DNA of 64,000 bases from IMGVR_UViG_3300046787_000286:150007-214006, one strand, 5' to 3'; shown: positions 27,069 to 58,659, numbered from the stretch's first letter. Notes: a model not told the origin generated them from the letters alone. Numbers and translations: made by a program.

Positions 27069-27308
27069 TCAACCGCCCCATTTTAGCAGAAAAGCACAGT
27101 AATCACGCTCGTTGTCGAAGTAAAATAGGTAGCGACCATCTGCGTGATCCGAACTAACTTGTATCAATTGCCAACGCCATTCGCCTTGCATTTCTGATTC
27201 CTTGCACCAGGCGATCACTGAGTCCAGGCCGCCAAATGGTTGATGGATTTCGACTGCATGTTTAAAACTATCTTTTGCTCTTACAACTAGGTTGTCTAAA
27301 ACATTCAT
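27069..27308 (-). CDS. dispersed member of the F-x-L-[RK]-W small-protein family
   Basis: VIAWC...W.W...FYFDNERDYCAFLLKW. Confidence 0.8.
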   Translation of the reverse strand: MNVLDNLVVRAKDSFKHAVEIHQPFGGLDSVIAWCKESEMQGEWRWQLIQVSSDHADGRYLFYFDNERDYCAFLLKWGG

Positions 27309-28129
27309 AAGTTAGGGGTTAGTTCCATTTCTGGTAGCTGGTTATCTATAACATGATTATACATAACCTTCTCAACTGTGCGTATACGGTCTTGTTTTGT
27401 TTGGGACCCTAATACCACAATAATGTATTGTTGTTGCTTTTGTTCAACTACTAATCCCAAACAAAAACCTGCTCGAGACGTGAATCCAGTTTTGCTCACA
27501 ACAATGTTATCAAACTCAAACAGCAACGGAGAATTTGTATTTTTTAAATTTACAGTTCTAACACGTTTTTTAAATTGAGCTTCAACAGCCACTTGCTTGC
27601 GTGTGGTTACTTCTTGAATAATCCAATATCCTGAAGCAGTTTCCATCATGCTAACAACTTCTGTTGCTGTACTTATATTGTTAGCACTGAGGCCAGTAGG
27701 ATCTTCGAATCGAGTGTTCTTCATGCCCCATTCACGGGCTTGTTGATTCATTGCTGCAATAAACGCAGATCTCCCGCCTGGGTAATCGTTTGCTAGTGTT
27801 TCAGCCGCAGCATTGTCCGATCTAACCAGCATGGCTTGTAGCAGTTGCCAGCGATTATAAGTTTGTTTGGGCAAATGACTGCCCACACGACCATCTAACT
27901 TTAACCTGCGTTGTAGATTTTTATCGTAGTCCAACGCAACCATTGCGGTCATAATTTTAGTCACTGATGCAATTGGGCGAACTGCATCTTTGTTATGCGA
28001 GTATTCAATACGATCTTTTGCCGAATTGTAAACAATTACACTGGGTTCTGCTTTTTGAACTCGAGGTTTTGCTACTGCTGTGCCTGCTACTAAAATTAGT
28101 GTTATGAAGAAATATTTTATTATGCCCAT
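27305..28129 (-). CDS. D-alanyl-D-alanine carboxy/endopeptidase (peptidase S11, PBP7-like)
   Basis: Signal peptide; IASVTK (SxxK), SDN (SxN), KTG. Confidence 0.93.
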   Translation of the reverse strand: MGIIKYFFITLILVAGTAVAKPRVQKAEPSVIVYNSAKDRIEYSHNKDAVRPIASVTKIMTAMVALDYDKNLQRRLKLDGRVGSHLPKQTYNRWQLLQAMLVRSDNAAAETLANDYPGGRSAFIAAMNQQAREWGMKNTRFEDPTGLSANNISTATEVVSMMETASGYWIIQEVTTRKQVAVEAQFKKRVRTVNLKNTNSPLLFEFDNIVVSKTGFTSRAGFCLGLVVEQKQQQYIIVVLGSQTKQDRIRTVEKVMYNHVIDNQLPEMELTPNL

Positions 28130-28347
28130 TTTAACCTGTAAAAACTAGCCATAGCTGGATCTGCAAACTCAAATATAACTTGGCTATCAGATTCCGGGGT
28201 CGAGCTAAAACTATCGCTGTATTTAACGGGCTGAAATCTCCATGTATAATCCTGATCTACTACTAGACCTGTCCGATCCAGATCTATCTTTAATGCAATA
28301 GCTTCAGCAGCGGATAGTTTAGTAATAGTAAGAGAGTTCAGTGTCAA
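28120..28347 (-). CDS. dispersed member of the F-x-L-[RK]-W family (start uncertain)
   Basis: DYTWRF...VIFEFADPAMASFYRLKWA; probable TTG start. Confidence 0.65.
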   Translation of the reverse strand: MTLNSLTITKLSAAEAIALKIDLDRTGLVVDQDYTWRFQPVKYSDSFSSTPESDSQVIFEFADPAMASFYRLKWA

Positions 28348-28735
28348 AATCTTGTACCAAATGATCAAACGGTTGATTGAAATATCTATACACAGAACGA
28401 ATGTCATCCACATAACACTTGCTAGGGTTGCCTTCGCGAAAGGATGCCATTTCGTAAAAGAAAAACTTTTGCTTGCTTTGGCGCATTTGGCGCTTGGTGT
28501 AGTAAGATGGAAAACCTTCAAACGAATCCAGTGAGCGCTCGCATTCAGGAGTAATATCCCACAGGATTCCCCAAACAGATTCGCCAGGGCTAGGCTCCAC
28601 TGTTGCATGAGAGTAGAACTTTAGTTTCCAGCCTTGCAAAACAAACGGGCGTGGATTAGTGGCACCAGGGCAACGGCGTGCCATGCTAGCTTGACTCATA
28701 TTTGCCCCGTAGGCAAAATACAATTTCTTGGTCAT
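28319..28735 (-). CDS. gamma-glutamylcyclotransferase (AIG2-like)
   Basis: YFAYGANM...RCPGA...LDSFEGFP..Y. Confidence 0.88.
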   Translation of the reverse strand: MTKKLYFAYGANMSQASMARRCPGATNPRPFVLQGWKLKFYSHATVEPSPGESVWGILWDITPECERSLDSFEGFPSYYTKRQMRQSKQKFFFYEMASFREGNPSKCYVDDIRSVYRYFNQPFDHLVQDFDTELSYYY

Positions 28736-30882: not shown

Positions 30883-31022
30883 GTACCGTCTCCTCTGTCA
30901 TACCATTCTAAATTATCGCCAGGTTTCCAGCCCACTTCGTCTAGCATTTCCTGGGGAAAGGGAAGAATTAAATCTTCGCCTTCCTCTTCGATCATTACAC
31001 TCCATGTTTTGACTTTTGTCAT
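30834..31022 (-). CDS. AbrB/MazE/SpoVT-type DNA-binding protein
   Basis: DLILPFPQEMLDEVGWKPGDNLEW. Confidence 0.75.
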   Translation of the reverse strand: MTKVKTWSVMIEEEGEDLILPFPQEMLDEVGWKPGDNLEWYDRGDGTWEIRKKLSQSDNEDF

Positions 31023-31903
31023 ACTTCCACCGTTAGCAGTTCAAAGTCAATAGCACGTTGTTCATGTCCAGTGTAGCCACGTGGGTTGCAAACAACTCGA
31101 GTTTCCCCAACCATATAATCAAACACATGATGAGTATGGCCGTGTGTCCACAATTTAATTTGCGGGTGATCCACAATAAACTCGTCTAGGTCTGAACTAT
31201 ATCCGCCGTTCATGATAGTGTCATCGGCATACATTGGATGTGTTGACTGCTTGCTGGGTGAGTGATGGCCGCACACAACAAACTTTTGATCAAACTTGCC
31301 TTCAACAATTTGCTGAATATAGCCCTTCATCTTTACATGCTCTTCAAACGCATCCTCGGGCTGAAACTTAGCTGTACGAGTTTTAAAGATTGGCTTTTCA
31401 CGATTGTCGACACCGTTGATTTGTTCGTAAGCCTTGTAGTTTACAACACGGTTAGAGTTTTCGACAACACGGAAATCGTTCATCATAGCTTTCATATGAT
31501 ATAAAGTTAACGTGTCACCGTTGTTCATGTCAGTCCACAATGTGCCACCGATAAACGTAACATCATCGATAACTTTGACTTCCTTTTCCAACACGTACAC
31601 ATTCTTCAAGTAGCCAAGCACATCCTTCAAGTGTGTTTCTGTCTTGGCAAAGTCGCCGTTGTAGTGTTCGTGGTTGCCCATCACGTAGATAACATGTGGG
31701 AACAGGGCAGAGCAGCGTTGCATAAAATCATGGTAACGATTACTACGATACTCTGTGCCCATTACGCCGTAAGGGTCACGCTGTGTTATATCTCTAGCAA
31801 CAAGAATGTCGCCTGATAAAATTAAAACGTCTGCTTGATCGGTGTTGTTGATTTCTAAGTCGCCAAACTCAAGATGCAGATCCGATGCTATTGCTATTTT
31901 CAC
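31019..31903 (-). CDS. calcineurin-like metallophosphoesterase
   Basis: SDLH, GD, GNHE, HH.P, HGHTH, NPRGY. Confidence 0.92.
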   Translation of the reverse strand: MKIAIASDLHLEFGDLEINNTDQADVLILSGDILVARDITQRDPYGVMGTEYRSNRYHDFMQRCSALFPHVIYVMGNHEHYNGDFAKTETHLKDVLGYLKNVYVLEKEVKVIDDVTFIGGTLWTDMNNGDTLTLYHMKAMMNDFRVVENSNRVVNYKAYEQINGVDNREKPIFKTRTAKFQPEDAFEEHVKMKGYIQQIVEGKFDQKFVVCGHHSPSKQSTHPMYADDTIMNGGYSSDLDEFIVDHPQIKLWTHGHTHHVFDYMVGETRVVCNPRGYTGHEQRAIDFELLTVEV

Positions 31904-33535: not shown

Positions 33536-36500
33536 ATGGCAAACCAAATTAACATTGATATCGGTGCAGCAGCAAATGACGGCACAGGCGATCCGTTACG
33601 CACCGCGTTTAATTACGTAAACAACAACTTTTCTAACGTTTGGAATACAGGATTACCTAACTCAAACGTTCAATTTTCTGACAATAGAATTTTAACAGTT
33701 AACACCAACGCTAACTTGGTGTTGGCACCTAATGGCATTGGCAAAGTTGCATCCAACGTTGATATTGTGCCTAACACAGCTAATGTATTTGCGCTAGGTG
33801 GGGCAAGTCGTCGTTGGAACACAGTTTACGGACAGTATTTAGATTTATCGCACAATGCAGTTATTGGCGGGAATTTAGTTGTTACAGGTAACTTATCAGC
33901 AGGGAATATCAGTTACACATCTAATGTATTTGTTGGCGACCTAGAAGGATCAGTGTTCGACGGTGCTAGTTCGATTGTGTTGGATGTAATTGACAGTACC
34001 ATTTACGTAGACAACTATCGTTATGCAAATGGCGTTCCTGTTTCTTTTGGCGGCAATTATAGCAATGCAAACGTGGCAGCATATTTGCCAACTTACACTG
34101 GCAATCTCAGTGCTAATAATATCACAGCTGGCAATGTGTTCACTGCACAGACAGTAACAGCAAATGATGCATACATTAACACTGGCACCTTTGCCGGGGA
34201 TGAGAATACCGGAGACGCTGCAATGTACGTTGGATCGCCAACGTTTACTAACCTGGGCTCAGATATCATGGCCCAGTTTACAGGCAACGTAACAACCTAC
34301 GCTCAAATCAACTTGCAGAACTGGAGTAATGCTGCCACTGCATCCGGCGATTACATTTTAACAGCAGACAACGGCAACGACTCTACTCACTTCCTGGATA
34401 TGGGTATAACCAGTTCTACCTGGGACGGTACACAAACAAACGTCTTAACCGGTCTCAATCCAAACAACGGTTACTTGTATGTACAAGATGGCAACTTAAC
34501 ACTGGGCACAAGAGCAGGCAACGTAAGTTATAGCTGGAAGTTTGATACCACAGGCAACTTAACTGTGGCCGGAAACGTTATCCCCACAGGCAACAACACA
34601 CAGAGTTTAGGTAGTGCAACCCAGCAATGGAATGACTTGTATTTGTCCAATGCTACAATTTACATGAACTCTGTGCCGATCAGTTTGACTGCCGACAATG
34701 TGCTCACAGTCAATGGTGCAGATGTTGTAACAACCAACAGTGAAGGACAGGCAAACATTGGTAACCTTGACATCAACGGCACTGTTATTCAAATTGCAGA
34801 AGGTGCTTCAGAAACTCTAATCAATATTACTCCTAGTGGACCTACCGCAGGTTGGGCATATTTACAACTTCCCACAAATGGCACTGCAAATACAGCCAAC
34901 ACACGCTTGCATAACGATGCCGGCAATATAGAATTTGGTACAGGAGATTTTTCAACAGGTAGCACCAACTATACTTGGACATTTAACAACACCGGAACCT
35001 TGGTTTTTCCTGCCAACCCTAATGGTCAAATCTATGGTGGCCAAGACAACGATTTTATCATCACCACCTCCAATGCCAATGCTGCCACATACTATTTTAC
35101 TTTCAGTCAGTTAGGCGATCTCACAGTTCCTATCAATCTCAATGTGTCGGGCAATGTCTATACAAATGATATTGTAGGAGCAGGAGCTGGCAACATCACA
35201 ATCACAGCTAACACACAGTCATGGTTATTTGATGACACTGGCATGTTGACTTTGCCCAGCGAGGGTCAGATTAGATCTGTGGCCAACACTGGCATGAGAC
35301 TCAGTGCTGGTGCCAGCGATGTCACTGGCTTGTTGTTAAACAACACTGGCGATGCTGAACTCTATGCTAATGCCAATGTATCCGTATACACTGACTCTGG
35401 AAACACCGGCTGGACGTTTGACACTGCTGGTAATCTAACACTTCCTGGTAACGCTGGTGCAAACAATGCAAGCATTTCAGCAACAGTCAATGGTAGTATT
35501 CTAGGCCTAAACAGTCAGGCTAATGGTTCAGTAAGATTGAGAGCATATGGCAGTGCTGCCAACCTGGTTGCTGGCATGGCTGTGTTTGGTGAAGACGGTG
35601 AAGTTGATCGTGTTCAAATCAGCACTTATAACCCTGGCATTGATGATAACAACGCTTGGGTATTTAACACTAGTGGCGATTTAACCACGCCAGATGGTAA
35701 CATATTCTTTGGCACAGGCGCTAATAGTGCTGTTATTGTGCCAGCAGGTAATTCTGTTAAAATAGCCGCAGATCGCGGAAATACTTCAAAAAATTATATT
35801 GATATAACCAGCAGTGGAATAACCATTGATGCACTAGGTGGTTCCACTGCTGACATTAGAATAAGAGCCGCAGATGATATTTTTGTGCAAGGCGGGGACA
35901 AAACAAGTGCTCCGGGACAACGCGGTGGTGATATCAATATTGATGGTGGCCAAGGTGGCCCAGACAATGGTGTCAATGCAGGCGACGGCGGCGACATTGC
36001 CATTCAAGGTGGCCTGGGCGGCGAGATATTAGCAGGTGGATCAGGCGACGGCGGCGATGTGACACTGCTTGGTGGTACAGGTAGCACCGCCAACGTTGCT
36101 AATTTACTAGGGGCAGGCCGCGGCGGCCTGGTGGTGATACAAGGTGGTCAAGGTGGCGATCAAGCAGGCAACACTTCTCTATCAGAGCGCGGCGGCAACG
36201 TTGACATCTACGGCGGCCAAGGCAGTTTTGACTTTGCGAACACTTTGCCAAGTGGTCTTCCAGGCCATGTTAACCTCTATGGTGGCAACTGGGGATTTGT
36301 CAATGCTCCAAGTGGCAACATCTATCTCAATACCTATGACGGAACAAACTTCAAGACATTGACCTACGATACTGCTGGCAATGTCACAATGGCCGCTGGT
36401 GGTGCATTAAACATGGTGGGATCAAGTTCGGGCATTGTTCAATCGCCAAACAATGATTTGATTGTCACAGTTCAAGATGATGACAATGACGATTGGGCAT

Positions 36501-37540
36501 TATACAATCGAATCACTGACACTGGCGCAACATTGGGCGAAACAAGACTACGCCGTGGCGATTTTCGAATTGATTTTCCTGGTGTGTCAAAGACCTTTAC
36601 CTTTGATGATAGTGGTGTACTTAGTTTACCCGGTGATATTGCTTCTAGCACTCAAGGCGGAGATATCAGTCTTTATGCAATCGACGATGGCGACAGTGGA
36701 TCTGCAGAGATAAAAACTATCAGTTTTGCTGGTAGTACGCTAGGTAGTAATGTCAGAGTAACCCAAAGCAACGCCACTATTTCGACCAGTAACGCTGCAT
36801 ACACCTGGACATTTGATAACACTGGTAATCTAACAGTTCCAGGAAACACCATTGTTTCCACAGCCAATGCCACAGGCGGTCTAGGTGGTAAGAGCGTAAG
36901 CATTACTGCTGGCGCCAGTGACGCAGTTACTTGGAATTCAAACCCAGGTGGCAATGTAAACATCACAGGCGGATACGGCTCGTTTGGCGGCGGCGGCGGC
37001 GGTCCTGGTGGTAATGTTAATATCACAAGTGGTGGTAGTTCAGATAGCCATGCAGGCAATGTAACTATCAATTCCGGCGCTAATGCATGGAACTTTGATT
37101 ACACCGGTAATTTAGACGCCCCGGGTAATATTACATCCACTAACTTTGTCGGCAACGGCGCAGCATTGACCAATGTTGCTACACAAGTAACAGGTTCCTG
37201 GACATTAGCCGCAGGGACAAACACTGCAAATATTACAGTTCCGCCAAACGGTACTTACACAATCTGGGTCAATGGAAACATTCCAAACGGTATTGCAGTA
37301 TGGAACGCTACTGTAACTATTACCAACAATAACGTGCCAGTAATTGGACAACAATTTGCTTGGAATTATTCTGGTAATGCGTTGGTGATTACTTCAATTC
37401 CATCACAGATCATTGGAACAGCAGGTGCTATTAGTAATGCATCACCGGCTGTTGGCACAACTACCAATGTGTTTGAGTTCAGCATTGACAACAACAGTGG
37501 TAATAGTCAGACTGTGGACTACGGATGGACTAAACTTTAA
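33536..37540 (+). CDS. long tail fibre / adhesin-like virion protein
   Basis: gp9/gp10-like N-terminus (IGAAANDGTGDPLRTAF), ten W-x-F-D-x-x-G-x-L-T-like repeats, Gly-rich repeats; 1334 aa. Confidence 0.85.
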   Translation: MANQINIDIGAAANDGTGDPLRTAFNYVNNNFSNVWNTGLPNSNVQFSDNRILTVNTNANLVLAPNGIGKVASNVDIVPNTANVFALGGASRRWNTVYGQYLDLSHNAVIGGNLVVTGNLSAGNISYTSNVFVGDLEGSVFDGASSIVLDVIDSTIYVDNYRYANGVPVSFGGNYSNANVAAYLPTYTGNLSANNITAGNVFTAQTVTANDAYINTGTFAGDENTGDAAMYVGSPTFTNLGSDIMAQFTGNVTTYAQINLQNWSNAATASGDYILTADNGNDSTHFLDMGITSSTWDGTQTNVLTGLNPNNGYLYVQDGNLTLGTRAGNVSYSWKFDTTGNLTVAGNVIPTGNNTQSLGSATQQWNDLYLSNATIYMNSVPISLTADNVLTVNGADVVTTNSEGQANIGNLDINGTVIQIAEGASETLINITPSGPTAGWAYLQLPTNGTANTANTRLHNDAGNIEFGTGDFSTGSTNYTWTFNNTGTLVFPANPNGQIYGGQDNDFIITTSNANAATYYFTFSQLGDLTVPINLNVSGNVYTNDIVGAGAGNITITANTQSWLFDDTGMLTLPSEGQIRSVANTGMRLSAGASDVTGLLLNNTGDAELYANANVSVYTDSGNTGWTFDTAGNLTLPGNAGANNASISATVNGSILGLNSQANGSVRLRAYGSAANLVAGMAVFGEDGEVDRVQISTYNPGIDDNNAWVFNTSGDLTTPDGNIFFGTGANSAVIVPAGNSVKIAADRGNTSKNYIDITSSGITIDALGGSTADIRIRAADDIFVQGGDKTSAPGQRGGDINIDGGQGGPDNGVNAGDGGDIAIQGGLGGEILAGGSGDGGDVTLLGGTGSTANVANLLGAGRGGLVVIQGGQGGDQAGNTSLSERGGNVDIYGGQGSFDFANTLPSGLPGHVNLYGGNWGFVNAPSGNIYLNTYDGTNFKTLTYDTAGNVTMAAGGALNMVGSSSGIVQSPNNDLIVTVQDDDNDDWALYNRITDTGATLGETRLRRGDFRIDFPGVSKTFTFDDSGVLSLPGDIASSTQGGDISLYAIDDGDSGSAEIKTISFAGSTLGSNVRVTQSNATISTSNAAYTWTFDNTGNLTVPGNTIVSTANATGGLGGKSVSITAGASDAVTWNSNPGGNVNITGGYGSFGGGGGGPGGNVNITSGGSSDSHAGNVTINSGANAWNFDYTGNLDAPGNITSTNFVGNGAALTNVATQVTGSWTLAAGTNTANITVPPNGTYTIWVNGNIPNGIAVWNATVTITNNNVPVIGQQFAWNYSGNALVITSIPSQIIGTAGAISNASPAVGTTTNVFEFSIDNNSGNSQTVDYGWTKL

Positions 37541-37752
37541 GCCCACCGTAAGTTAAACCAGGCACGGTCTTGGTCGTTGAGCACTCGCCACACGTCAAAA
37601 CCACCAAGTGTGCCTTGGTATTCAATTGTGATGCTATTCTCACCTGCCCACTCATACACTTCTTGACGCTTTGAGTACGGTGTTGCAATATCACGAGCAT
37701 CACTCATGAACACATATCCACGATCGTCACGAGCAAACTCTTTGAGTGCCAT
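37537..37752 (-). CDS. array member 17 (71 aa)
   Basis: Ends NDQDRAWFNLRWA. Confidence 0.8.
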   Translation of the reverse strand: MALKEFARDDRGYVFMSDARDIATPYSKRQEVYEWAGENSITIEYQGTLGGFDVWRVLNDQDRAWFNLRWA

Positions 37753-37973
37753 TACTGCCACCTCATTGCAAACACTGCGGCTTTTTTAGAGCAGTCGAAT
37801 TTCCACTCTGGATTACCGATCCATCGCGGATCGTGCCATCCGTCGTCTACACAAGGGCCAAAGTTCTTTTGACACCATTCAAACATCTCCATGTAGTGGT
37901 GCCAGTCTCGTGTGGGTACATTAATAATGTATTTCCACTTTCGTCGATCTTTTCTACGTTGATGACTATTCAT
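37752..37973 (-). CDS. array member 16 (73 aa)
   Basis: MNSHQRRK...EWCQKNFG...AAVFAMRWQ. Confidence 0.8.
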   Translation of the reverse strand: MNSHQRRKDRRKWKYIINVPTRDWHHYMEMFEWCQKNFGPCVDDGWHDPRWIGNPEWKFDCSKKAAVFAMRWQ

Positions 37974-38203
37974 TTCCATCTCAGCAAGAACATTGTGTAG
38001 GATTTTTCATCCGGGAACTCAACCATCATTTCCTTGCTCAAGCCATACTTGCCGCCAAACGAGCCAGCACGAACTTTGCGAGCACCGTAGTCACGGGCTA
38101 GCACATCCCAGATACTCATGTGGGTACCGTTGGCGGGTTGATCAAACTTTTCCCAATACCAGTCGGCAATTTTTTTAAAATAGGGTTCGATGTTTACTCT
38201 CAT
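37970..38203 (-). CDS. array member 15 (77 aa)
   Basis: Ends FPDEKSYTMFLLRWK. Confidence 0.8.
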   Translation of the reverse strand: MRVNIEPYFKKIADWYWEKFDQPANGTHMSIWDVLARDYGARKVRAGSFGGKYGLSKEMMVEFPDEKSYTMFLLRWK

Positions 38204-38595
38204 GACGTATATTTTAACGCAATCATCATAGCGTCCCTTTCATCGTTTGTTGCCACAAATACTTTATCTCTATCACCCATTCCGTTAATGTCCCATTCCC
38301 CAGTCCATTGGTTCCACATGACTCGTTCAAATTGCCAAACGCAAGTGTTAGTAACTGGACGCTGTGGCCAAAAATATTGCCTAGCATCTTCGCATGGCAC
38401 ATAAGCAAATGGTTCGCATATATCAAAGAACTTGTTTGGGCTGACTATGATAACATGTTTAAAGTTTTGGAACATGTTAGGGATTGTGCTAGCACGATAG
38501 ACTACATTCTCTTCGTACCACGCTTCCCACTCTCGTGTAGCCTTGTCCTTACCGGTACGCCAGGTTAGCCACCGGTCTTTGATCCATTCAATCAT
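38200..38595 (-). CDS. array member 14 (131 aa)
   Basis: Ends NDERDAMMIALKYTS. Confidence 0.75.
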   Translation of the reverse strand: MIEWIKDRWLTWRTGKDKATREWEAWYEENVVYRASTIPNMFQNFKHVIIVSPNKFFDICEPFAYVPCEDARQYFWPQRPVTNTCVWQFERVMWNQWTGEWDINGMGDRDKVFVATNDERDAMMIALKYTS

Positions 38596-38774
38596 GACCA
38601 TTTCAACTTATATACGATGTAAATATCTTCGTCCATGTAGATATTGTCTAGCCCGTAGTCATACTGTGTACCCCAACGACGACCTTCTGGACCAAAGTTG
38701 AGCCCTAGCCAATGTCGTACCTCACTCTTACGAACTGCTGGCCAGTTCTCAATTGCTATTCCGTATTGCTTCAT
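38592..38774 (-). CDS. array member 13 (60 aa)
   Basis: WLGLNFG...EDIYIVYKLKWS. Confidence 0.8.
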   Translation of the reverse strand: MKQYGIAIENWPAVRKSEVRHWLGLNFGPEGRRWGTQYDYGLDNIYMDEDIYIVYKLKWS

Positions 38775-38775
38775 G

Positions 38776-38997
38776 TTACATCTTTAACAAAAACATCATG
38801 TAGTCCTTTTCTTCTTTGAACACAATGTAGTTCTTGTCTTTGCGCCAACTAAACTCTTGGTCACCGTTGTACTCTGCTTTAACAAACTGCCAAAAGCTCT
38901 TGCTGTACACGCCCTTGCCGCGACTAAGCATTGCATCAACGATTCTTGCACTGTATTCCTCTGCAAGTACCCTGTGTTTTTTGCGGAATACGTTCAT
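38776..38997 (-). CDS. array member 12 (73 aa)
   Basis: Ends FKEEKDYMMFLLKM. Confidence 0.8.
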   Translation of the reverse strand: MNVFRKKHRVLAEEYSARIVDAMLSRGKGVYSKSFWQFVKAEYNGDQEFSWRKDKNYIVFKEEKDYMMFLLKM

Positions 38998-39281
38998 AGC
39001 CATTTCAACTTTATAAACGTCATCAAGTCCTCGCGCACATGATAGATAGCACGATGTCGCTCACCGGAGGCTTCCCATTGTTCATCTTTAGTGCCATTAG
39101 CTTCGATCCAGTCTCCGAACCAGTAACTGCAATTTAAGCGATACCAAAGGATCCCGTCATTACGATCGTGTGGGTAGAAACCGACTTCTCCCCCGAGCTC
39201 GTAGTGATATAACTTGTCGCCGTATAGCGGATCACCTTCAATCGGACGCTTTCTGTAAACCCATTTTTGAAAATCTCCCAT
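38994..39281 (-). CDS. array member 11 (95 aa)
   Basis: Ends EDLMTFIKLKWL. Confidence 0.8.
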   Translation of the reverse strand: MGDFQKWVYRKRPIEGDPLYGDKLYHYELGGEVGFYPHDRNDGILWYRLNCSYWFGDWIEANGTKDEQWEASGERHRAIYHVREDLMTFIKLKWL

Positions 39282-39481
39282 TATGCAAACCTCAACTTAA
39301 ACCACATTAGATCTTTCTTGCGCTTGAAGTAGATTTCATCACTAAAGTGATAGTAGTGCCAATTTTTACGCAGGAAGTTTTCGTTGCAAAAAGCAAAGTG
39401 CTGTTCTCTTTCGGTAGGGTGTGTTGGCACACAATGCTTGAACTTTTCTTCATACGTGCCGTAATCAACAATCAGTGTCAT
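39281..39481 (-). CDS. array member 10 (66 aa)
   Basis: Ends YFKRKKDLMWFKLRFA. Confidence 0.8.
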   Translation of the reverse strand: MTLIVDYGTYEEKFKHCVPTHPTEREQHFAFCNENFLRKNWHYYHFSDEIYFKRKKDLMWFKLRFA

Positions 39482-39708
39482 GACCACTTCAGTGCAAAGT
39501 ACACTGCATCTTTTTGCTCACTAAATTTAAACTCAGCGTGAGACCACCCATTCTCGTTTTTCCAACTGCCTTTGCAATTTTTCCTACACCAACGAGCTGC
39601 TAGTTCAACCTTTTGGTCATGCTCGAAGTAGCGTTTTTGTTCGGCAGTGCGAAGTGTGATAATGTGAGGATGCTCACGTTTTGCTTTGCGTCTTTGTGCT
39701 GAATTCAT
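39478..39708 (-). CDS. array member 9 (76 aa)
   Basis: MNSAQRRK...WCRKNC...QKDAVYFALKWS. Confidence 0.8.
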   Translation of the reverse strand: MNSAQRRKAKREHPHIITLRTAEQKRYFEHDQKVELAARWCRKNCKGSWKNENGWSHAEFKFSEQKDAVYFALKWS

Positions 39709-39953
39709 GATGCCCACTTTAATACAAACGCGGTATGACTGGATTCTTTATCCCACCGCAAATACCAACCTTGTGTTTTTGTGATAACAAGTTTGCCCCC
39801 AAGCGGCCTAAGTTGATAGTTCATAACAGTTGCAGTAGACCAGCCATTTGTACGAGCAATCCCTTGGCAATGTTCCAAGAAGTTATCAAACCACTTAGGG
39901 CTGTCATCTTTCCAATAGCTTTTTAAAATAGTAACACGAAATTTATCAGGCAT
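39705..39953 (-). CDS. array member 8 (82 aa)
   Basis: Ends ESSHTAFVLKWAS. Confidence 0.8.
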   Translation of the reverse strand: MPDKFRVTILKSYWKDDSPKWFDNFLEHCQGIARTNGWSTATVMNYQLRPLGGKLVITKTQGWYLRWDKESSHTAFVLKWAS

Positions 39954-40147
39954 TATTTCCACCTCAACATAAACCACTCTGCGTCTTGTTTACGCTCAAA
40001 CTTAACAGCCGTGCTTGAGCGATGAATATGATACATACCTTTGCTGTCGTGTGTCCGCAACCATTCCCACTGGTCGTTATTCAACGGCCGTTTTAACAGA
40101 ACATTCGTCCAGTCTTTTGTATTGTGCGAATCTGGCGTGTGAATCAT
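39953..40147 (-). CDS. array member 7 (64 aa)
   Basis: Ends FERKQDAEWFMLRWK. Confidence 0.8.
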   Translation of the reverse strand: MIHTPDSHNTKDWTNVLLKRPLNNDQWEWLRTHDSKGMYHIHRSSTAVKFERKQDAEWFMLRWK

Positions 40148-40602
40148 GACCACTTCAACTTATAAAACACAAAATCTTTTTCATCGCGGAAGTGAATTTC
40201 TCCGACACCAACCCACCAACGACTCCACGCATCTGGTTTGTCGGGGTGCTTTCCGAACTGCTCGGTACACCATTCGATGATTTCGTTATACTCACGGCCT
40301 AGACGCCAGATGCCATTGCCAATGTCAACAGTGTGCCACTTAGCACGGCTAAATTGGTATTTGGGTTTTGTAACAGGATGCATTGGCAAGAAAATTTCCT
40401 TACATAAGTTAGAACCCATTACAGAAACGCTTCGCTGTTTCAATGCTGAATAGTAGTATAAAGAAATCAGACTCTTACCAGTTTGTCGACCACCGGAGAA
40501 AATCATCATTTCACTAGGATGAATACCGCCAGTAGTATTACTTAATACCGTTGGCGTCAGGGCGTCCCAAGCTTCGAGATCAACTATTGTTTTATTTTTC
40601 AT
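40144..40602 (-). CDS. array member 6 (152 aa) with N-terminal helicase-like P-loop remnant
   Basis: TGGIHPSEMMIFSGGRQTGKS ... EWCTEQFG...FRDEKDFVFYKLKWS. Confidence 0.8.
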   Translation of the reverse strand: MKNKTIVDLEAWDALTPTVLSNTTGGIHPSEMMIFSGGRQTGKSLISLYYYSALKQRSVSVMGSNLCKEIFLPMHPVTKPKYQFSRAKWHTVDIGNGIWRLGREYNEIIEWCTEQFGKHPDKPDAWSRWWVGVGEIHFRDEKDFVFYKLKWS

Positions 40603-40811
40603 GACCACCTCAGTATAAACCAATTGCGTGTTTTTTCATCGGGAAATGCCACCACTATTTGCTGGCTGGCTGCGCTGCCAAAGGTGTGGCTAATACCATA
40701 CTCGCGGTCAAGCCAATCCCAGATACTAACATTGGACTTGTATGGGTTATCCCAATAGTGATTAGCGACCTTCTTGAAGTAGGGATAGATGTCTGCATAG
40801 ATTTTAGTCAT
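40599..40811 (-). CDS. array member 5 (70 aa)
   Basis: Ends FPDEKTRNWFILRWS. Confidence 0.8.
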   Translation of the reverse strand: MTKIYADIYPYFKKVANHYWDNPYKSNVSIWDWLDREYGISHTFGSAASQQIVVAFPDEKTRNWFILRWS

Positions 40812-41020
40812 GACCACCTCAGTACAAATAACACAGCATCCTGTTTGGATCTAAAATGCCACACAGTTTGGTCCCGGCGAAACATAGCACCCCTGTAGTC
40901 TTCTTGACAGTTTTGTTTGCACCACACAAACCTCTCGTCCTTGCCCCATACCCAACCACCTGAATGTGGTACTTCCACACGATGCTGGAGATCTCGGCTG
41001 CGACTGTATTTTGCTGTCAT
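40808..41020 (-). CDS. array member 4 (70 aa)
   Basis: WCKQNC...FRSKQDAVLFVLRWS. Confidence 0.8.
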   Translation of the reverse strand: MTAKYSRSRDLQHRVEVPHSGGWVWGKDERFVWCKQNCQEDYRGAMFRRDQTVWHFRSKQDAVLFVLRWS

Positions 41021-41202
41021 AACCACTTCAATGCAAACATTGTAGCATCTTTTTCATGTTGAAAGTTAAATGTAACATACTGTCGTTTATCAATAACTTC
41101 CCATGTGCGATTAAGCAAGTTCATGCCATGCTCTTGTGCCCATTCCTGGCGCTCTGACACTTCAATGATATTGCGACATGCAACAGTTACAGGATACCAC
41201 AT
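41017..41202 (-). CDS. array member 3 (61 aa)
   Basis: Ends FQHEKDATMFALKWL. Confidence 0.8.
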   Translation of the reverse strand: MWYPVTVACRNIIEVSERQEWAQEHGMNLLNRTWEVIDKRQYVTFNFQHEKDATMFALKWL

Positions 41203-41393
41203 TACGACCACCTCAATGCAAATAGCACAGCACTCGCTTGCTCGTTAAACTTGAAAATAAAATCTGCTTTTCCAGCAGCCATGCCATAAGTCCAATCTCT
41301 TTGCCATTGAAAATCGTTGTCTACTTCGAGCCAGTCAAATACATCGGGTAACACTTTGTCCCGTGGGAGCTTGATTGAAACATCGTAAGTCAT
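41202..41393 (-). CDS. array member 2 (63 aa)
   Basis: Ends FNEQASAVLFALRWS. Confidence 0.8.
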   Translation of the reverse strand: MTYDVSIKLPRDKVLPDVFDWLEVDNDFQWQRDWTYGMAAGKADFIFKFNEQASAVLFALRWS

Positions 41394-41632
41394 GACCACC
41401 TCAACAAAAACAATGTGTAGTCTTTTTCATTTTCAAAATAAACAGTTTCGTTCCGCCAAAACCAGTATACATAACCAAAGGCGTCACGGCACCATTGAAC
41501 TATTTCGTTAAATGGCGCAGAACCGTTATACTGCCAAACGTATACTTTCGACGTGCTTACAGCCCCCACGGAACCGGAAGCCGGAACAAGTGCAGTTGAA
41601 ATTTCCACTATTCTCTGTGACTTTGTATTCAT
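41390..41632 (-). CDS. array member 1 (start uncertain, overlaps SWIM gene)
   Basis: QWCRDAFG...FENEKDYTLFLLRWS. Confidence 0.75.
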   Translation of the reverse strand: MNTKSQRIVEISTALVPASGSVGAVSTSKVYVWQYNGSAPFNEIVQWCRDAFGYVYWFWRNETVYFENEKDYTLFLLRWS

Positions 41633-41882
41633 CGCCTTTGCTACCTTTCACAACCCACATACGACCTAGGGGCTCATCCTCTTTGAGTTTTGTTTTAAAC
41701 TGCACAGGATTCACAATAAACTTGCGGCCACGAGTTTCAATCTTGATGGGATTCCGGAACACTTTGATGTCGCCTGTGCCCCGGGGTTTGAAAGCATACA
41801 TCTTGACCTTGGCATCATCCAGCAAGTAGATACCGTTGGGAACAGAGTCCTTGTAGTCAGTTGTTTCAGCAAACCATTTCAT
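41526..41882 (-). CDS. SWIM zinc-finger protein
   Basis: V.GSKG..Y.V...CTCSGF.FRG.CKH. Confidence 0.85.
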   Translation of the reverse strand: MKWFAETTDYKDSVPNGIYLLDDAKVKMYAFKPRGTGDIKVFRNPIKIETRGRKFIVNPVQFKTKLKEDEPLGRMWVVKGSKGDEYKVTENSGNFNCTCSGFRFRGGCKHVESIRLAV

Positions 41883-42485: not shown

Positions 42486-42515
42486 TTGGGGCTCCTTTTT
42501 ACTGTCTATGCGTAT

Positions 42516-42544
42516 ATTATAGCAAATCGGTAATTTTTGGTCAA
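42516..42544 (-). promoter_or_regulatory. sigma70 early promoter driving the operon that contains the array
   Basis: TTGACC-17-TATAAT, close variant of the 42-bp repeat. Confidence 0.85.
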
Positions 42545-42545
42545 C

Positions 42546-42812
42546 TCAATTTACCACTTTGTAGCTGTCTTTTTCGAAGAACAACCCGTATACTTTAGTA
42601 TTAACTCTGCGTTCTGTTCCCACACGCCAATCTGAGCAGTGATGGGTTCCGCCTGACCCAGCCCAAGCACCGCAGTAGGAGTAGGATACTGTATAGGGCT
42701 CGCTTACAACTTCGTAAGTGCCAAACACATCATTGACAATGCTAGTACCCACAATTCCAAAAACTGTTAGTACACAAGCCACGATGCAGAAGTTTGTTTG
42801 TTTTGCTGTCAT
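42546..42812 (-). CDS. membrane-anchored protein (predicted leaderless) between two promoter repeats
   Basis: N-terminal TM, C...C pair; ATG 6 nt after TATAAT. Confidence 0.65.
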   Translation of the reverse strand: MTAKQTNFCIVACVLTVFGIVGTSIVNDVFGTYEVVSEPYTVSYSYCGAWAGSGGTHHCSDWRVGTERRVNTKVYGLFFEKDSYKVVN

Positions 42813-42818
42813 GTGTAT

Positions 42819-42876
42819 ATTATAGCAAAACGGAAAATTCTGGTCAACCAAGCAAAATGTAATACTTTTGTAATAC
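42819..42876 (-). promoter_or_regulatory. early promoter with palindrome
   Basis: TTGACC-17-TATAAT; GTAATACTTTTGTAATAC at 42859-42876. Confidence 0.85.
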
Positions 42877-43612: not shown

Positions 43613-43854
43613 GGTTCTAACAACCAACCCTGCCCGCTTGCTCGATGATACCAGCGGTAAAAAGGCTCAGATATAATTAATTTTCCATCTACAGCCATAT
43701 ACGAGTATTTGGGCAGTATTTCTATTCTATCTATTACAACCGCATCGTTGGCAGAAAATGATAATATATCGTGAAGGCCAGCTTCATGTTCTATTCCATT
43801 TATAACAACAGTTAACGTTGGCTCAGTAGCCAGCAGTTCTGAAAAGTTCTTCAT
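43606..43854 (-). CDS. hypothetical protein
   Basis: PFYRWYH..SGQGWLL.P; coupled to the radical SAM gene. Confidence 0.65.
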   Translation of the reverse strand: MKNFSELLATEPTLTVVINGIEHEAGLHDILSFSANDAVVIDRIEILPKYSYMAVDGKLIISEPFYRWYHRASGQGWLLEPQ

Positions 43855-45094
43855 ATTCGGGTAGGTAGGTTAAGACAGAGTTTCCTCTGTTGGATTCAAG
43901 CTGCTTCAAGTATTTGACCAAGTCTGGCAAGCGCCAACTTTCATCTGGTTCAGTACTTAGATAATTTACGTAACTTTGTAAGTCTTGCACCAATTGTGCT
44001 TGCACAGTGTTGGGATTTCTAATGTTCACTATTTGATCGCTTGTGATCATATGAGCATCGATCCAGGCTTGCATTTTATCTATAATCTGTTGTCTATAAC
44101 TCATTGGCAATACTGAAGGTTTTAGAACTTCCGGTCTATATAAAAAATTACAGCTTTCAACGATAATGCTATGTGCTAGTGCATAATCGTATATAGGAAG
44201 CAGTGTATGAACAGTCAAACAAGTAGGCGTTGTTCTAAATTGCATTAACCATTTGAGTTCATTGGCTACTGTTTTCCATCGTTCTAGATTTTCAAACACT
44301 GTTGGCAAGCATACTGGCCAACGAACATAGTCGTTGATAATGCTAAAACTTTCAACACTGAATCCAAGATTAACACCCTTGAATTGTTTAAGTAAATCAA
44401 CAATATCATTGTCCCATACTGACAGATTAGTAGTGAACCCAATGGTTGCATTTGTGTTTAGCCCTGCGTCAACTAGTGCTTGTAGGATAATTCTAAACGC
44501 CGGGGTAATTAATGTTTCGCCGCCAATAAAGTGCAAATACTGTATATGTGGACTTTGCTTTAATGTGTTGATAAATTTCTGAACTAATAAAGGATCATCG
44601 CTCCAGTTAGCAGGTGGCATCTCAGTGATGAACCCAATTTTTTTCCATTCAGCAGCAAGGCGTGAACTTGACTCTGGTCTGCAAAAGACGCAGGCACTGT
44701 TACAAAAATTTCCCAAATCTATTTGCCAATCTTGTGGGTACTGGCTACACTTACTGTCGCCAAATGTAGACACCCATGGGCTGCTTGCTAACGTTTTTTC
44801 AAACTCATCTAGTCTAACTCCAACTTTGAGTAACTGTTTTTGCCTGCCGCTGATTTTATCATGCTTTTCCATGCTGCGACAAGTGTGGCATCCTGCAGGG
44901 CTTGCGCCTTGCAGTAACTCATTTCTCAGGGGTTGCATTATTGTTTGAAAATAATCAACTGGATCAATATCTCTAATATTGTGAGTGCGCGGGGATTGGG
45001 CCCAGCGACAATACTCAAAATCACCAGAATTTGTTATTCTCATGTGAATCCAAGGGCTTGAGCAAAAGTTATTTTTGATATTGTTCTCTGACAT
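43823..45094 (-). CDS. radical SAM enzyme with twitch-like domain
   Basis: CSSPW...YC...CHTC; CNSACVFC; GGET; TTN. Confidence 0.9.
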   Translation of the reverse strand: MSENNIKNNFCSSPWIHMRITNSGDFEYCRWAQSPRTHNIRDIDPVDYFQTIMQPLRNELLQGASPAGCHTCRSMEKHDKISGRQKQLLKVGVRLDEFEKTLASSPWVSTFGDSKCSQYPQDWQIDLGNFCNSACVFCRPESSSRLAAEWKKIGFITEMPPANWSDDPLLVQKFINTLKQSPHIQYLHFIGGETLITPAFRIILQALVDAGLNTNATIGFTTNLSVWDNDIVDLLKQFKGVNLGFSVESFSIINDYVRWPVCLPTVFENLERWKTVANELKWLMQFRTTPTCLTVHTLLPIYDYALAHSIIVESCNFLYRPEVLKPSVLPMSYRQQIIDKMQAWIDAHMITSDQIVNIRNPNTVQAQLVQDLQSYVNYLSTEPDESWRLPDLVKYLKQLESNRGNSVLTYLPEYEELFRTAGY

Positions 45095-58144: not shown

Positions 58145-58659
58145 ATATGCCCTGTAATCTGAAGAGTATATCTATCTTCTATCCCAATGTTTGCAGCCAT
58201 ATGTGGCTCATCATATACCCATTCAACGGTATCTCCTGCACGCCAACATGTGTATGGTTTTCCTGCCACTTCGAGATAGTGTCCGGATTTCCAATCTTCC
58301 AACAACACTAACGAACGTCTAATAGTTGTTTCTTTGCCTTGTAAATTAAACAGCTCAATATACCGCTTGTATAGGTCTCTATGAACTGGCATCACTGTGC
58401 CAGTTGGCATACGATAAAACGCAAGCCCGACATCTTGCCAGCCTTGCTGTTCGTATATGTTAATAAACGTCTTTGCCCAGGCAGGTAATCGATGGCGCAT
58501 ATCGCACAGGTCACCAGTAATTTTATTTTGGTAACCTTGCGAGATCCAGAGTTCAACACTGCTTGGATCATTGAACGGTTCCTGGATGTAATCTAATGTT
58601 TTAAACTCATCATCCCAAAACCGTTCTATACGATATTTAAGCGGCACGTGTATTGCCAT
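58141..58659 (-). CDS. 2OG-Fe(II) oxygenase (Asp/Asn hydroxylase-like)
   Basis: MPVHRD (HxD), PHMAAN, RYTLQITG. Confidence 0.8.
   Translation of the reverse strand: MAIHVPLKYRIERFWDDEFKTLDYIQEPFNDPSSVELWISQGYQNKITGDLCDMRHRLPAWAKTFINIYEQQGWQDVGLAFYRMPTGTVMPVHRDLYKRYIELFNLQGKETTIRRSLVLLEDWKSGHYLEVAGKPYTCWRAGDTVEWVYDEPHMAANIGIEDRYTLQITGHI

What the first reader, a model, noticed from the sequence alone, without database searches (positions are those of the whole stretch)
37741..41410. Array junctions are dual-coded: the L-R-W-S-stop codons are also the Shine-Dalgarno and start of the next gene
Seen on the minus strand: junction consensus TGA(G/A)GTGGTCATGA, with GTGGTCATGA exact at five junctions (41390, 40808, 40599, 40144, 39478). 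Eleven junctions are ATGA overlaps, four are TAATG and one is a 1-nt gap. GAGGTG is complementary to the 16S rRNA 3' end. Seven of the eight Arg-type tails with a downstream partner use AGG, whereas the last gene, which has no partner, uses CGG. Inference: each gene carries the translation start signal of whatever follows, so any cassette inserted at this ~13-nt microhomology is expressed at once. That would give an integrase-free, accordion-like cassette system.
Basis: partly seen in the sequence, partly recalled or inferred. Interest (0 to 1): 0.78.

Follow-up and report, generated by a model that had tools for sequence, protein, structure and literature searches.

The report
Coding junction motif links phage mini-gene cassettes
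In an uncultured freshwater jumbo phage, 17 tiny related genes are chained head to tail. The last codons of each gene (Leu-Arg-Trp-Ser-stop) also spell the ribosome-binding site and start codon of the next gene, and the same roughly 15-base motif marks where whole genes have been gained, lost and re-ordered between related phages.

Summary
Seventeen minus-strand paralogs (window 41632-37537) are joined by 11 ATGA overlaps, 4 TAATG overlaps and one 1-nt gap. GTGGTCATGA is exact at five junctions. Arg tails with a downstream partner use AGG 7 times and AGA once; the last gene uses CGG.

This is not chance. AGG makes up 3.7% of Arg codons genome-wide. Across about 30 related phage loci it is 46/50 when a start follows 4-9 nt later, against 6/15 when none is detected. 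GAGGUGGUC can pair over 9 bp with the 16S 3' end, but only about half of the window's junctions have a strong Shine-Dalgarno (SD) sequence.

Comparative data support cassette behaviour. Copy number at this locus ranges from 0 to more than 30. The g4 cassette has 7 different downstream and 5 different upstream neighbours in 7 genomes. Homology blocks end at the stop codon. One 2.1-kb indel (L005 vs L007) has its crossover inside the motif. No integrase or resolvase was found; relatives encode a RecA/UvsX-like protein.

There are no recent duplicates, so this is shuffling rather than rapid amplification. Translational coupling with an SD inside the upstream gene is textbook. The shuffling logic resembles PeSL linkers of T4-type phages. 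I rate it a new variant of known kinds. Protein function is unknown.

The parts
42811..42851 (-). Promoter-like repeat element (TTGACC-17-TGcTATAAT), upstream copy
   Evidence: 11/12 match with TG; D7; at least 11 copies in the genome, all on the minus strand.
42508..42548 (-). Promoter-like repeat element, the copy nearest upstream of the array
   Evidence: No comparably good promoter or terminator match lies inside the array.
41526..41882 (-). Conserved 118-aa anchor gene just upstream of the array. By eye it has a CxC...CxH motif resembling a SWIM zinc finger; this was not tested against Pfam.
   Evidence: 53 related loci at 50-89% aa identity; no PHROG match.
41390..41632 (-). g1 (80 aa if it starts at the ATG at 41632, which overlaps the anchor gene by 107 nt). 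Tail LLRWS. Junction TTGAGGTGGTCATGA (ATGA overlap).
   Evidence: Anti-SD duplex -14.1 kcal/mol. N-terminus MNTKSQ conserved in P0001/P0004 and in L003/L005.
41202..41393 (-). g2. Tail ALRWS. Junction TTGAGGTGGTCGTAATG (TAATG overlap).
   Evidence: Duplex -15.8 kcal/mol.
41017..41202 (-). g3. Tail ALKWL. Junction TTGAAGTGGTTATGA.
   Evidence: Duplex -5.9. 98% aa ortholog in L063.
40808..41020 (-). g4. Tail VLRWS. Junction CTGAGGTGGTCATGA. This is the best-sampled mobile cassette.
   Evidence: Orthologs at 80-89% aa in L003, L004, L005, L061, L062 and L063. Seven different downstream and five different upstream neighbours. Duplex -14.1.
40599..40811 (-). g5. Tail ILRWS. Flanked on both sides by the exact repeat CTGAGGTGGTCATGA.
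   Evidence: Absent between g4' and g6' in L003. A 92%-nt ortholog in L059/L060 sits among other neighbours, with homology spanning 40821-40599 only.
40144..40602 (-). g6 (152 aa, longer N-terminus). Tail KLKWS. Junction TTGAAGTGGTCATGA.
   Evidence: Orthologs in L003, L005 and L063; in L063 it lies upstream of g3'g4'.
39953..40147 (-). g7. Tail MLRWK. Junction TTGAGGTGGAAATAATG (TAATG overlap).
   Evidence: Duplex -10.3.
39705..39953 (-). g8. Tail VLKWAS. Junction AAGTGGGCATCATGA.
   Evidence: Ortholog in L062 lies after g13'.
39478..39708 (-). g9. Tail ALKWS. Junction CTGAAGTGGTCATGA.
   Evidence: Duplex -7.5.
39281..39481 (-). g10. Tail KLRFA. Junction TTGAGGTTTGCATAATG (TAATG overlap).
   Evidence: An X4 contig joins this tail directly to the g15 start.
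38994..39281 (-). g11. Tail KLKWL. Junction TTGAAATGGCTATGA.
   Evidence: An X4 contig joins g11 directly to g13, skipping g12.
38776..38997 (-). g12. Tail LLKM. The only non-overlapping junction (TAA C ATG).
   Evidence: Duplex -1.6.
38592..38774 (-). g13. Tail KLKWS. Junction TTGAAATGGTCATGA.
38200..38595 (-). g14 (131 aa, divergent member). Tail ALKYTS. Junction ACGTCATGA, no SD.
   Evidence: Widespread homologs of about 133 aa.
37970..38203 (-). g15. Tail LLRWK with AGA. Junction CTGAGATGGAAATGA.
   Evidence: Closest in-array paralog of g5 (42% aa).
37752..37973 (-). g16. Tail AMRWQ. Junction ATGAGGTGGCAGTAATG (TAATG overlap).
   Evidence: Duplex -10.7.
37537..37752 (-). g17, the last gene. 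Tail NLRWA with TTA CGG. Stop TAA, no downstream partner; convergent with the stop of the + strand ORF 33536-37540.

Best explanation
The array is one promoter-distal, probably early, polycistronic block of tiny paralogous genes. Each encodes a small beta-alpha-beta-beta-alpha domain of unknown function that ends in a C-terminal helix ...F-x-L-R/K-W-S/A.

The codons chosen for that helix end (xTG AGG TGG TCA/GCA TGA) read in a second way. GAGGUGGUC can pair over up to 9 bp with the 16S rRNA 3' end, and the ATGA that follows holds both the stop of one gene and the start of the next. Ribosomes finishing one mini-gene would therefore re-initiate, or be recruited, on the next gene without needing any intergenic DNA. 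This is termination-reinitiation coupling assisted by an SD inside the upstream gene.

Because every cassette ends in the same 12-22 nt, that stretch also serves as a short homology. Homologous or short-homology recombination there (relatives encode a RecA/UvsX-like protein) deletes, inserts or exchanges whole cassettes. Any crossover inside the motif keeps both reading frames and the coupling signal, so a new neighbour remains translatable.

Shown here: the anatomy, the partner-dependent codon bias, the spread of the motif across the lineage, the differences in cassette content and order, and breakpoints at the motif.

Inferred: co-transcription, actual coupling, and recombination at the motif as the cause of the breakpoints rather than a correlate.
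For: Anatomy and motif
- Junction anatomy.
- The motif is far above chance in the window.

Codon bias
- AGG is 3.7% of Arg codons genome-wide and 8% inside the array gene bodies, but 7/8 at partnered tails (binomial 7e-10).
- Across non-redundant related loci, AGG is 46/50 when an ATG lies 4-9 nt downstream and 6/15 when no partner is detected (Fisher 7e-5). Several of those 6 have GTG starts or lie at contig ends.
- The Leu third base that completes GAGG is G in 57/64 partnered tails against 16/35 unpartnered (Fisher 7e-6).
- In 96 unique partnered tails, information is high from -11 to +3 and collapses to under 0.25 bit immediately after ATGA.

SD strength and RNA
- Anti-SD duplex is -14.1 kcal/mol for GAGGUGGUC. 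The array junction median is -7.35, against -3.55 for the 70 other overlapped junctions of this genome (Mann-Whitney p=0.003).
- There is no hairpin at the junctions.
- Strong sigma70-like promoter repeats lie upstream at 42.5 and 42.8 kb, with none as good inside the array.

Cassette behaviour
- 0 to more than 30 cassettes follow the same anchor gene in 53 related loci.
- g4 has 7 different downstream and 5 different upstream neighbours.
- Among orthologous cassette HSPs, 11/13 end within -1..+6 nt of the stop (null 3.4%). 9/13 start within 0-30 nt above the previous stop, that is in the preceding tail or at the ATG (null 12.6%).
- Gene order differs in L062 and L063.
- L007 follows the L005 g1' body up to TTGAGGTGGTCA and then follows the L005 C16-tail/C9 junction. 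This is a 2.1-kb indel whose crossover lies inside the motif, and it is seen in three contigs: L007 and L010 are 99.8% identical, and L011 shows the same junction and tail sequences.
- g5 is flanked by an exact 15-nt repeat and is absent in L003.
- Contigs from other freshwater and wetland metagenomes join g10 to g15 and g11 to g13 at cassette borders.
- The exact 15-mer recurs 3-8 times, at spacings of roughly 160-1,300 nt, in many IMG/VR contigs, between cassettes that are at most 40% identical.

Recombinases
- No integrase or resolvase was found. A RecA-like gene is present in 4 relatives.

Literature
- SD inside the upstream gene with ATGA coupling is common in bacteria (PMC6728339).
Against: - Only about 8 of 16 window junctions have a good SD. 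Lys-type tails pair weakly.
- The host and its 16S 3' end are unknown. The anti-SD sequence used is the common bacterial one, taken from my own knowledge.
- No RNA run holds the locus, so co-transcription and coupling are untested.
- Breakpoints at gene borders are also expected from illegitimate recombination followed by selection for intact genes.
- Paralogs share ancestry, so the codon counts are not fully independent.
- No genome pairs above 95% identity with an indel in the array were available.
- Many joints rest on less than 30 nt on one side, with unknown sequence in between.
- No RecA, RecT or ERF was found in the window's own contig, which is 62% complete.
Confidence: 0.6

Rival explanations
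1. By-product only. The motif is simply a conserved C-terminal peptide (L-R/K-W-S) of one protein family, combined with the ordinary tight ATGA packing of phage genes. It has no special role in recombination. Cassette-border breakpoints reflect selection against broken genes after random illegitimate recombination.
For: - The L-R/K-W tail is also kept in singletons and terminal genes that have no partner. It is predicted to be the end of a helix.
- ATGA/TAATG overlaps make up 29% of other junctions in this genome.
- An SD inside the upstream gene is generic (PMC6728339).
Against: - The peptide alone does not explain 92% AGG and 89% xTG at partnered tails, compared with at most 40-46% at unpartnered ones.
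- It does not explain exact 15-mers between cassettes that are at most 40% identical.
- The L005/L007 crossover lies inside the coding motif and produces an in-frame hybrid tail.
- WIN and L004 share an identical 22 nt in front of g4 although the upstream gene bodies are unrelated.
Confidence: 0.2
2. Recombination first. The nucleotide identity of the junction is maintained mainly by frequent crossing-over or gene conversion between tails (concerted evolution of a linker). The SD-like reading is incidental or secondary.
For: - Exact 15-mers are shared across very divergent cassettes and across phages.
- Terminal and singleton genes, which cannot recombine with a following cassette, lack the AGG/xTG bias.
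- RecA/UvsX-like genes are present in the lineage.
Against: - The bias tracks the presence of a start codon at SD-compatible spacing of 4-9 nt.
- The biased bases are exactly those that complete GAGG.
- Array junctions bind the anti-SD more strongly than other overlapped junctions.
- Fifteen nt is short for RecA-type exchange.
Confidence: 0.15
3. Artefact. The apparent shuffling comes from chimeric metagenome assemblies that jump between repeated motifs.
For: - Several related contigs end inside arrays (L002, L003, L050).
- Logan unitigs of the source run break near junctions.
Against: - The exact repeats (15-22 nt) are shorter than usual assembly k-mers.
- The same junction is seen in separately assembled contigs. 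L007 and L010 are 99.8% identical, and L011 shows the same junction and tail sequences.
- L041/42/44/45 are identical to one another, as are L028/29/53.
- Every junction keeps intact frames.
Confidence: 0.03

Closest known systems
Translational coupling of overlapping gene pairs (ATGA/TGATG) by termination-reinitiation with an SD inside the upstream gene (Huber et al. 2019, PMC6728339)
   Same: Co-directional genes overlap by 4 or 1 nt. The downstream start is preceded by an SD encoded in the last codons of the upstream gene. The constraint shows up as codon choice.
   Different: - Here it is iterated 16 times in a row in the window, and more than 30 times in L026.
- The dual-coded stretch is the conserved C-terminus of a single paralog family.
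- As a result, the same 15-mer recurs at nearly every junction, and the amino acid itself (Arg over Lys) is skewed.
PeSL-mediated modular shuffling in hyperplastic regions of T4-type phages (Arbiol et al. 2010, PMC2839356; Comeau et al. 2014, PMC4122927)
   Same: Short conserved repeats flank small non-essential ORFs of unknown function. Indels and replacements between related phages have their breakpoints in the repeat. No site-specific recombinase is involved, and the phage recombination machinery is presumed to act.
   Different: - PeSLs are intergenic promoter plus stem-loop terminator cassettes, so each module is its own transcription unit.
- Here the linker is coding, unstructured, much shorter, and supplies translation signals rather than transcription signals.
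- A separate promoter-like repeat does exist in this genome, but not at the array junctions.
Integron gene-cassette arrays
   Same: Arrays of promoterless cassettes read from an upstream promoter. Each cassette carries its recombination element at its 3' end. Cassette content and order are variable.
   Different: No IntI-type integrase. No attC-like imperfect inverted repeat or hairpin. The cassettes are paralogs of one family rather than unrelated genes.
Conserved boundary ('linker') sequences at gene borders in lambdoid phage mosaics. This comparison rests on my own knowledge and was not checked in the paper library.
   Same: Short homologies at gene boundaries are proposed as sites of exchange between otherwise unrelated modules.
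   Different: Those are sporadic and mostly non-coding. Here the linker is systematic, translated, and doubles as the ribosome-binding site.
Genomic accordions (poxvirus-type tandem gene amplification). This comparison rests on my own knowledge.
   Same: Tandem array whose copy number differs between relatives.
   Different: There are no near-identical recent copies; in-array paralogs are at most 42% identical at the amino-acid level.

Membership tests
Translationally coupled overlapping gene pairs (termination-reinitiation) | Co-directional genes with a 4-nt (ATGA) or 1-nt (TAATG) stop/start overlap | tested here: met
   15 of 16 junctions. Chains of up to about 30 such overlaps occur in relatives.
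Translationally coupled overlapping gene pairs (termination-reinitiation) | SD-like sequence in the 3' end of the upstream gene at a functional distance from the start | tested here: met
   GAGG lies 5 nt before the ATG at 7-8 junctions. Duplex energy is -10 to -16 kcal/mol at 6 junctions, -7 to -8 at 3, and weak at 7. Codon bias depends on a partner.
Translationally coupled overlapping gene pairs (termination-reinitiation) | Downstream translation depends on translation of the upstream gene | not testable with these tools
   Requires reporter assays or ribosome profiling.
Translationally coupled overlapping gene pairs (termination-reinitiation) | Genes lie on one transcript | tested here: inconclusive
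   Strong promoter-like sites occur only upstream (42.5 and 42.8 kb). There is no good promoter or terminator in the array. No RNA run holds the locus.
Integron cassette array | Adjacent IntI tyrosine recombinase | tested here: not met
   PF00589 is absent from G000 and from four relatives, two of them 99-100% complete. PF00239 is also absent.
Integron cassette array | attC site: imperfect inverted repeat or hairpin at each cassette's 3' end | tested here: not met
   No inverted repeats at the junctions. Junction windows fold no better than shuffles, z 0 to +1.3.
PeSL modular shuffling (T4-type phages) | The repeat is an intergenic sigma70-like promoter plus a stem-loop terminator | tested here: not met
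   The junction motif is coding, has no promoter match and no stem-loop. Promoter-like repeats do exist elsewhere in the genome.
PeSL modular shuffling (T4-type phages) | Indel and replacement breakpoints between related phages fall in the repeat | tested here: met
PeSL modular shuffling (T4-type phages) | Excised mini-circles formed by exchange between neighbouring repeats | not testable with these tools
   Only contigs, not raw reads, were available.
Genomic accordion (tandem amplification) | Near-identical recent tandem copies | tested here: not met
   The best in-array pair is g5/g15 at 42% aa. Identity is at most 40% in other arrays, even between exact 15-mers.
Genomic accordion (tandem amplification) | Copy number varies between relatives | tested here: met
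   0 to more than 30 at the locus. Genome-wide counts are 22, 12, 12, 2 and 3.

The most novel reading that the evidence does not exclude
A translated 15-nt 'coupling linker' has co-evolved with the C-terminal helix of one mini-protein family. The same bases serve at once as protein end, strong SD, stop/start, and the homology at which promoterless cassettes are exchanged. This would let a lineage of uncultured jumbo phages build, prune and reshuffle libraries of dozens of tiny early genes without any site-specific recombinase or intergenic DNA. In function it would be an integron-like or PeSL-like system built on translation signals.
Probability: 0.4. Interest if true: 0.7.

Novelty: new variant of a known kind. 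Interest (0 to 1): 0.5.

Why it matters
- It offers a concrete, testable example of how large phages keep big, fluid repertoires of tiny accessory genes. Genes of this kind often turn out to act in host takeover or against host defences.
- Here a short dual-coded sequence could both ensure expression of whatever lies downstream and give recombination a frame-preserving landing pad.
- It is a clean natural case of a translation signal shaping a protein's C-terminal sequence: Arg-AGG is favoured over Lys or other Arg codons only when a gene follows.
- In practice, the exact 15-mer is a simple probe for finding such arrays in metagenomes.
- The design suggests a compact way to chain synthetic mini-ORFs.

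Tried and rejected
- megablast, blastn and tblastn against GenBank phages found nothing for the array, the anchor gene or g14. The lineage is uncultured.
- Pfam and PHROGs gave no family for any of the 17 proteins. The 5.8-billion-protein search gave only unnamed metagenomic hits. The ESM Atlas gave only viral hypothetical proteins.
- The search for related loci with the family alignment failed because no stretch was conserved enough. The anchor gene and single cassettes were used instead.
- The AF2 model (pLDDT 72) has a small beta-alpha-beta-beta-alpha fold. PDB matches have E of 0.3 or higher (RRM- or PII-like shapes), so I draw no function from them.
- RecA, RecT and ERF are not found in the window's own 62%-complete contig.
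- No related loci above 95% identity that differ by an array indel were found. Breakpoints were therefore mapped on relatives of about 80-93% identity.
- The generic all-vs-all analysis of HSP ends was set aside. It is confounded by paralog matches, which necessarily end at the conserved tail. The ortholog-only analysis was used instead.
- An integron reading was rejected (no integrase, no attC). An accordion-amplification reading was rejected (no recent copies).
- Resemblance of GGTGG to E. coli Chi (GCTGGTGG, from my own knowledge; 5 of 8 bases) was considered too weak to pursue.
- No metatranscriptome holds the locus.

Full report
**Source and context.** The window is the last 64 kb of a 214-kb IMG/VR viral contig, estimated 62% complete. 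Its relatives are 250-365-kb uncultured jumbo phages from freshwater and wetland metagenomes. Nothing similar is present among about 50,000 GenBank phage records.

**Observation.** On the minus strand, 17 small ORFs (g1-g17, 57-152 aa) run from 41632 to 37537.
- Their products are about 13-42% identical paralogs with the pattern ...W(C)..N......W......F..EKDA..F.L(R/K)W(S/A/K/L).
- No Pfam or PHROG family matches them.
There are 11 ATGA overlaps, 4 TAATG overlaps and one 1-nt gap. GTGGTCATGA is exact five times. AGG is used at 7 of the 8 partnered Arg tails, with AGA at g15, and CGG is used in the terminal g17.
- The 14-mer with up to 2 mismatches occurs 8 times in the array, against 0.33 expected by chance in the window.

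**Is the dual coding more than a by-product?** Genome-wide, AGG is 3.7% of Arg codons and TTG plus CTG are 35% of Leu codons. Inside the array gene bodies AGG is 8%.
- At the tail position, AGG is 7/8 (binomial 7e-10) and xTG is 12/16 (p=0.001).
- I collected 149 family members from non-redundant related loci. All hits were on the same strand as the anchor gene and none on the opposite strand.
- When an ATG that opens an ORF lies 4-9 nt after the R/K codon, Arg is AGG in 46/50 cases. Without a detectable partner it is 6/15 (Fisher 7e-5), and several of those six have GTG starts or lie at contig ends.
- The Leu third base, which supplies the first G of GAGG, is G in 57/64 partnered tails against 16/35 unpartnered (Fisher 7e-6).
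- Arg is also preferred over Lys when a partner follows: 50 to 17, against 15 to 17 without a partner.
- In 96 unique partnered tails, information content is high from -11 to +3 and drops to under 0.25 bit right after ATGA. Other synonymous sites in the conserved block, such as GAT/GAC and GCN, vary freely.
- GAGGUGGUC can form 9 base pairs, one of them G-U, with GAUCACCUC of the usual bacterial 16S 3' end. That sequence comes from my own knowledge, and the host is unknown. The duplex energy is -14.1 kcal/mol.
- The median for array junctions is -7.35, against -3.55 for the 70 other overlapped junctions of this genome (p=0.003) and -5.0 for spaced starts.
- The claim needs trimming. Six junctions are strong (-10 or lower), three are intermediate and seven are weak, mostly the Lys-type tails.
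- The junction RNA shows no structure (z 0 to +1.3). The SD would therefore be accessible, and there is no attC- or PeSL-like hairpin.

**Transcription context.** Two copies of a roughly 41-nt element carrying TTGACC-17-TGcTATAAT lie upstream at 42811-42851 and 42508-42548. At least 11 copies occur in the genome, all on the minus strand. No comparable promoter or terminator match lies in the array. A single long, probably early, transcript is therefore plausible but not shown, because no RNA run holds the locus.

**Cassette behaviour.**
- The 118-aa gene just upstream (41526-41882) anchors 53 related loci. Downstream of it the number of family genes ranges from 0 to more than 30, almost all chained by -4 or -1 overlaps with the dominant junction TTGAGGTGG(T/G)CATGA.
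- Genome-wide family counts are 22, 12 and 12 in three incomplete genomes, and 2 and 3 in two complete relatives.
- Ortholog clusters are mostly colinear with presence/absence differences. Order also differs in places. In L063, g6' lies upstream of g3'g4'. L062 has g4', g11', g13', g8'. L004 and L026 order their shared clusters differently.
- The g4 cassette (80-89% aa identity in seven genomes) has seven different downstream and five different upstream neighbours. From ATGA onward all copies align. Upstream, only the roughly 20-nt tail is similar. WIN and L004 share an identical 22 nt there although the upstream gene bodies are unrelated.
- For 13 ortholog-level HSPs between the window array and other phages, 11 end within -1..+6 nt of a stop codon (null 3.4%). 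Nine begin within 0-30 nt above the previous stop, that is in the preceding tail or at the ATG (null 12.6%).
- g5 is flanked by the exact 15-mer CTGAGGTGGTCATGA on both sides and is absent between g4' and g6' in L003. Its 92%-identical copy in L059/L060 sits among other neighbours, and homology covers only 40821-40599.
- The most precise case is L007, matched by L010 at 99.8% identity and by L011 with the same junction and tail sequences. It follows L005's g1' up to TTGAGGTGGTCA, and from there follows L005's C16 tail and the C9 gene 2.1 kb further on. That gives an in-frame hybrid tail, with the crossover inside 9-12 shared bases.
- Contigs from other metagenomes laid on the window show the same picture. 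One joins the g10 tail to the g15 start (38203/39286). Another joins g11 to g13, skipping g12 exactly (38774/38993). Most loose ends fall at a stop codon or 20-30 nt above one. Caveat: many of those joints rest on less than 30 nt, with unknown sequence in between.
- The exact 15-mer TTGAGGTGGTCATGA is found in at least 119 IMG/VR stretches, many with 3-8 copies. The cassettes between copies are at most 40% identical. The identity of the linker is therefore not a leftover of recent duplication.

**Enzymes.** No tyrosine integrase or serine recombinase was found in this contig or in four relatives, two of them 99-100% complete. A RecA/UvsX-like gene is present in all four relatives but not in the incomplete window genome.

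**The proteins.** An AlphaFold model of g4, built with a 59-sequence alignment, has mean pLDDT 72. It gives beta-alpha-beta-beta-alpha, with the conserved DAxxFxLRWS as the C-terminal helix. Structure searches return only uncharacterised phage proteins, including some from the jumbo Agrobacterium phage Atu_ph07, and non-significant RRM- or PII-like shapes. Function is unknown. From position and promoter type I infer early accessory genes.

**Interpretation.**
It is an instance of a known phenomenon, SD inside the upstream gene with ATGA termination-reinitiation (PMC6728339). What is unusual is that it is iterated and welded to a conserved peptide.
- The recombination half is supported by comparative breakpoints and one in-motif crossover. 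It cannot be separated cleanly from selection for intact genes.
- Its logic parallels PeSL-mediated shuffling in T4-type phages (PMC2839356, PMC4122927). The difference is that this linker is coding and unstructured, and it carries translation signals rather than transcription signals.
- The array fails the defining tests for an integron (no integrase, no attC) and for amplification-type accordions (no recent copies).
- Assembly chimeras are unlikely: the repeats are shorter than usual assembly k-mers, independent contigs agree, and all frames are intact.

**Verdict.** It is a new variant of known kinds, of moderate interest.

Noticed in passing
window 42508-42548, 42811-42851, 20420, 23555, 23823, 50878, 52111 (plus 4 copies outside the window in G000): A roughly 41-nt element, GGTTGACCAaAAtTgCCCGaTTTGCTATAATATACACAT, occurs at least 11 times, always on the minus strand. 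It has a near-consensus -35 and an extended -10, so these are probably the phage's early promoters. Copies are also conserved in related phages (blastn hits). It may be a PeSL-like repeat, but no attached stem-loop was examined.
   Followed up: partly
window 33536-37540 (+): A 1334-aa ORF rich in 'TGNLT.PGN'-type repeats (fibre- or beta-helix-like by eye) with no PHROG hit. It lies on the opposite strand between the array and the conserved downstream genes, and is absent at this position in L004-L006. Its stop abuts the g17 stop (convergent).
   Followed up: partly
G000:C1 about 50.7-53.3 kb; window 27069-27308, 28120-28608; G000 40959-41240: A second, looser array and several singleton members of the same family. 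Singletons and terminal members keep the L-R/K-W tail but use AAA, CGA or CGG rather than AGG.
   Followed up: partly
window 41526-41632: If g1 starts at the conserved ATG at 41632 (N-terminus MNTKSQ, also seen in relatives), it overlaps the 3' end of the anchor gene by 107 nt in another frame. This is an unusually long overlap, or else the true start is elsewhere.
   Followed up: no
L026:10257-17747: More than 30 consecutive mini-genes, nearly all joined by -4 or -1 overlaps. This is the longest such chain seen here. A few cassettes inside arrays lack the LRW tail yet still use ATGA (for example L005:11443-11760 and L026:12736-13008).
   Followed up: partly
window 17730-19256, 43823-45094, 58637-59878, 31022-31903: Two radical-SAM-like proteins, a UDP-glucose dehydrogenase-like protein and a metallophosphoesterase-like protein (PHROG hits), which are auxiliary metabolic or modification genes of the phage.
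   Followed up: no
L066 (NCBI assembly GCA_013565655.1, contig JACCDU010965521.1): A g14-like 133-aa gene sits in another chain of 18 small co-directional genes in a public metagenome assembly, so the array type is not confined to IMG/VR data.
   Followed up: no
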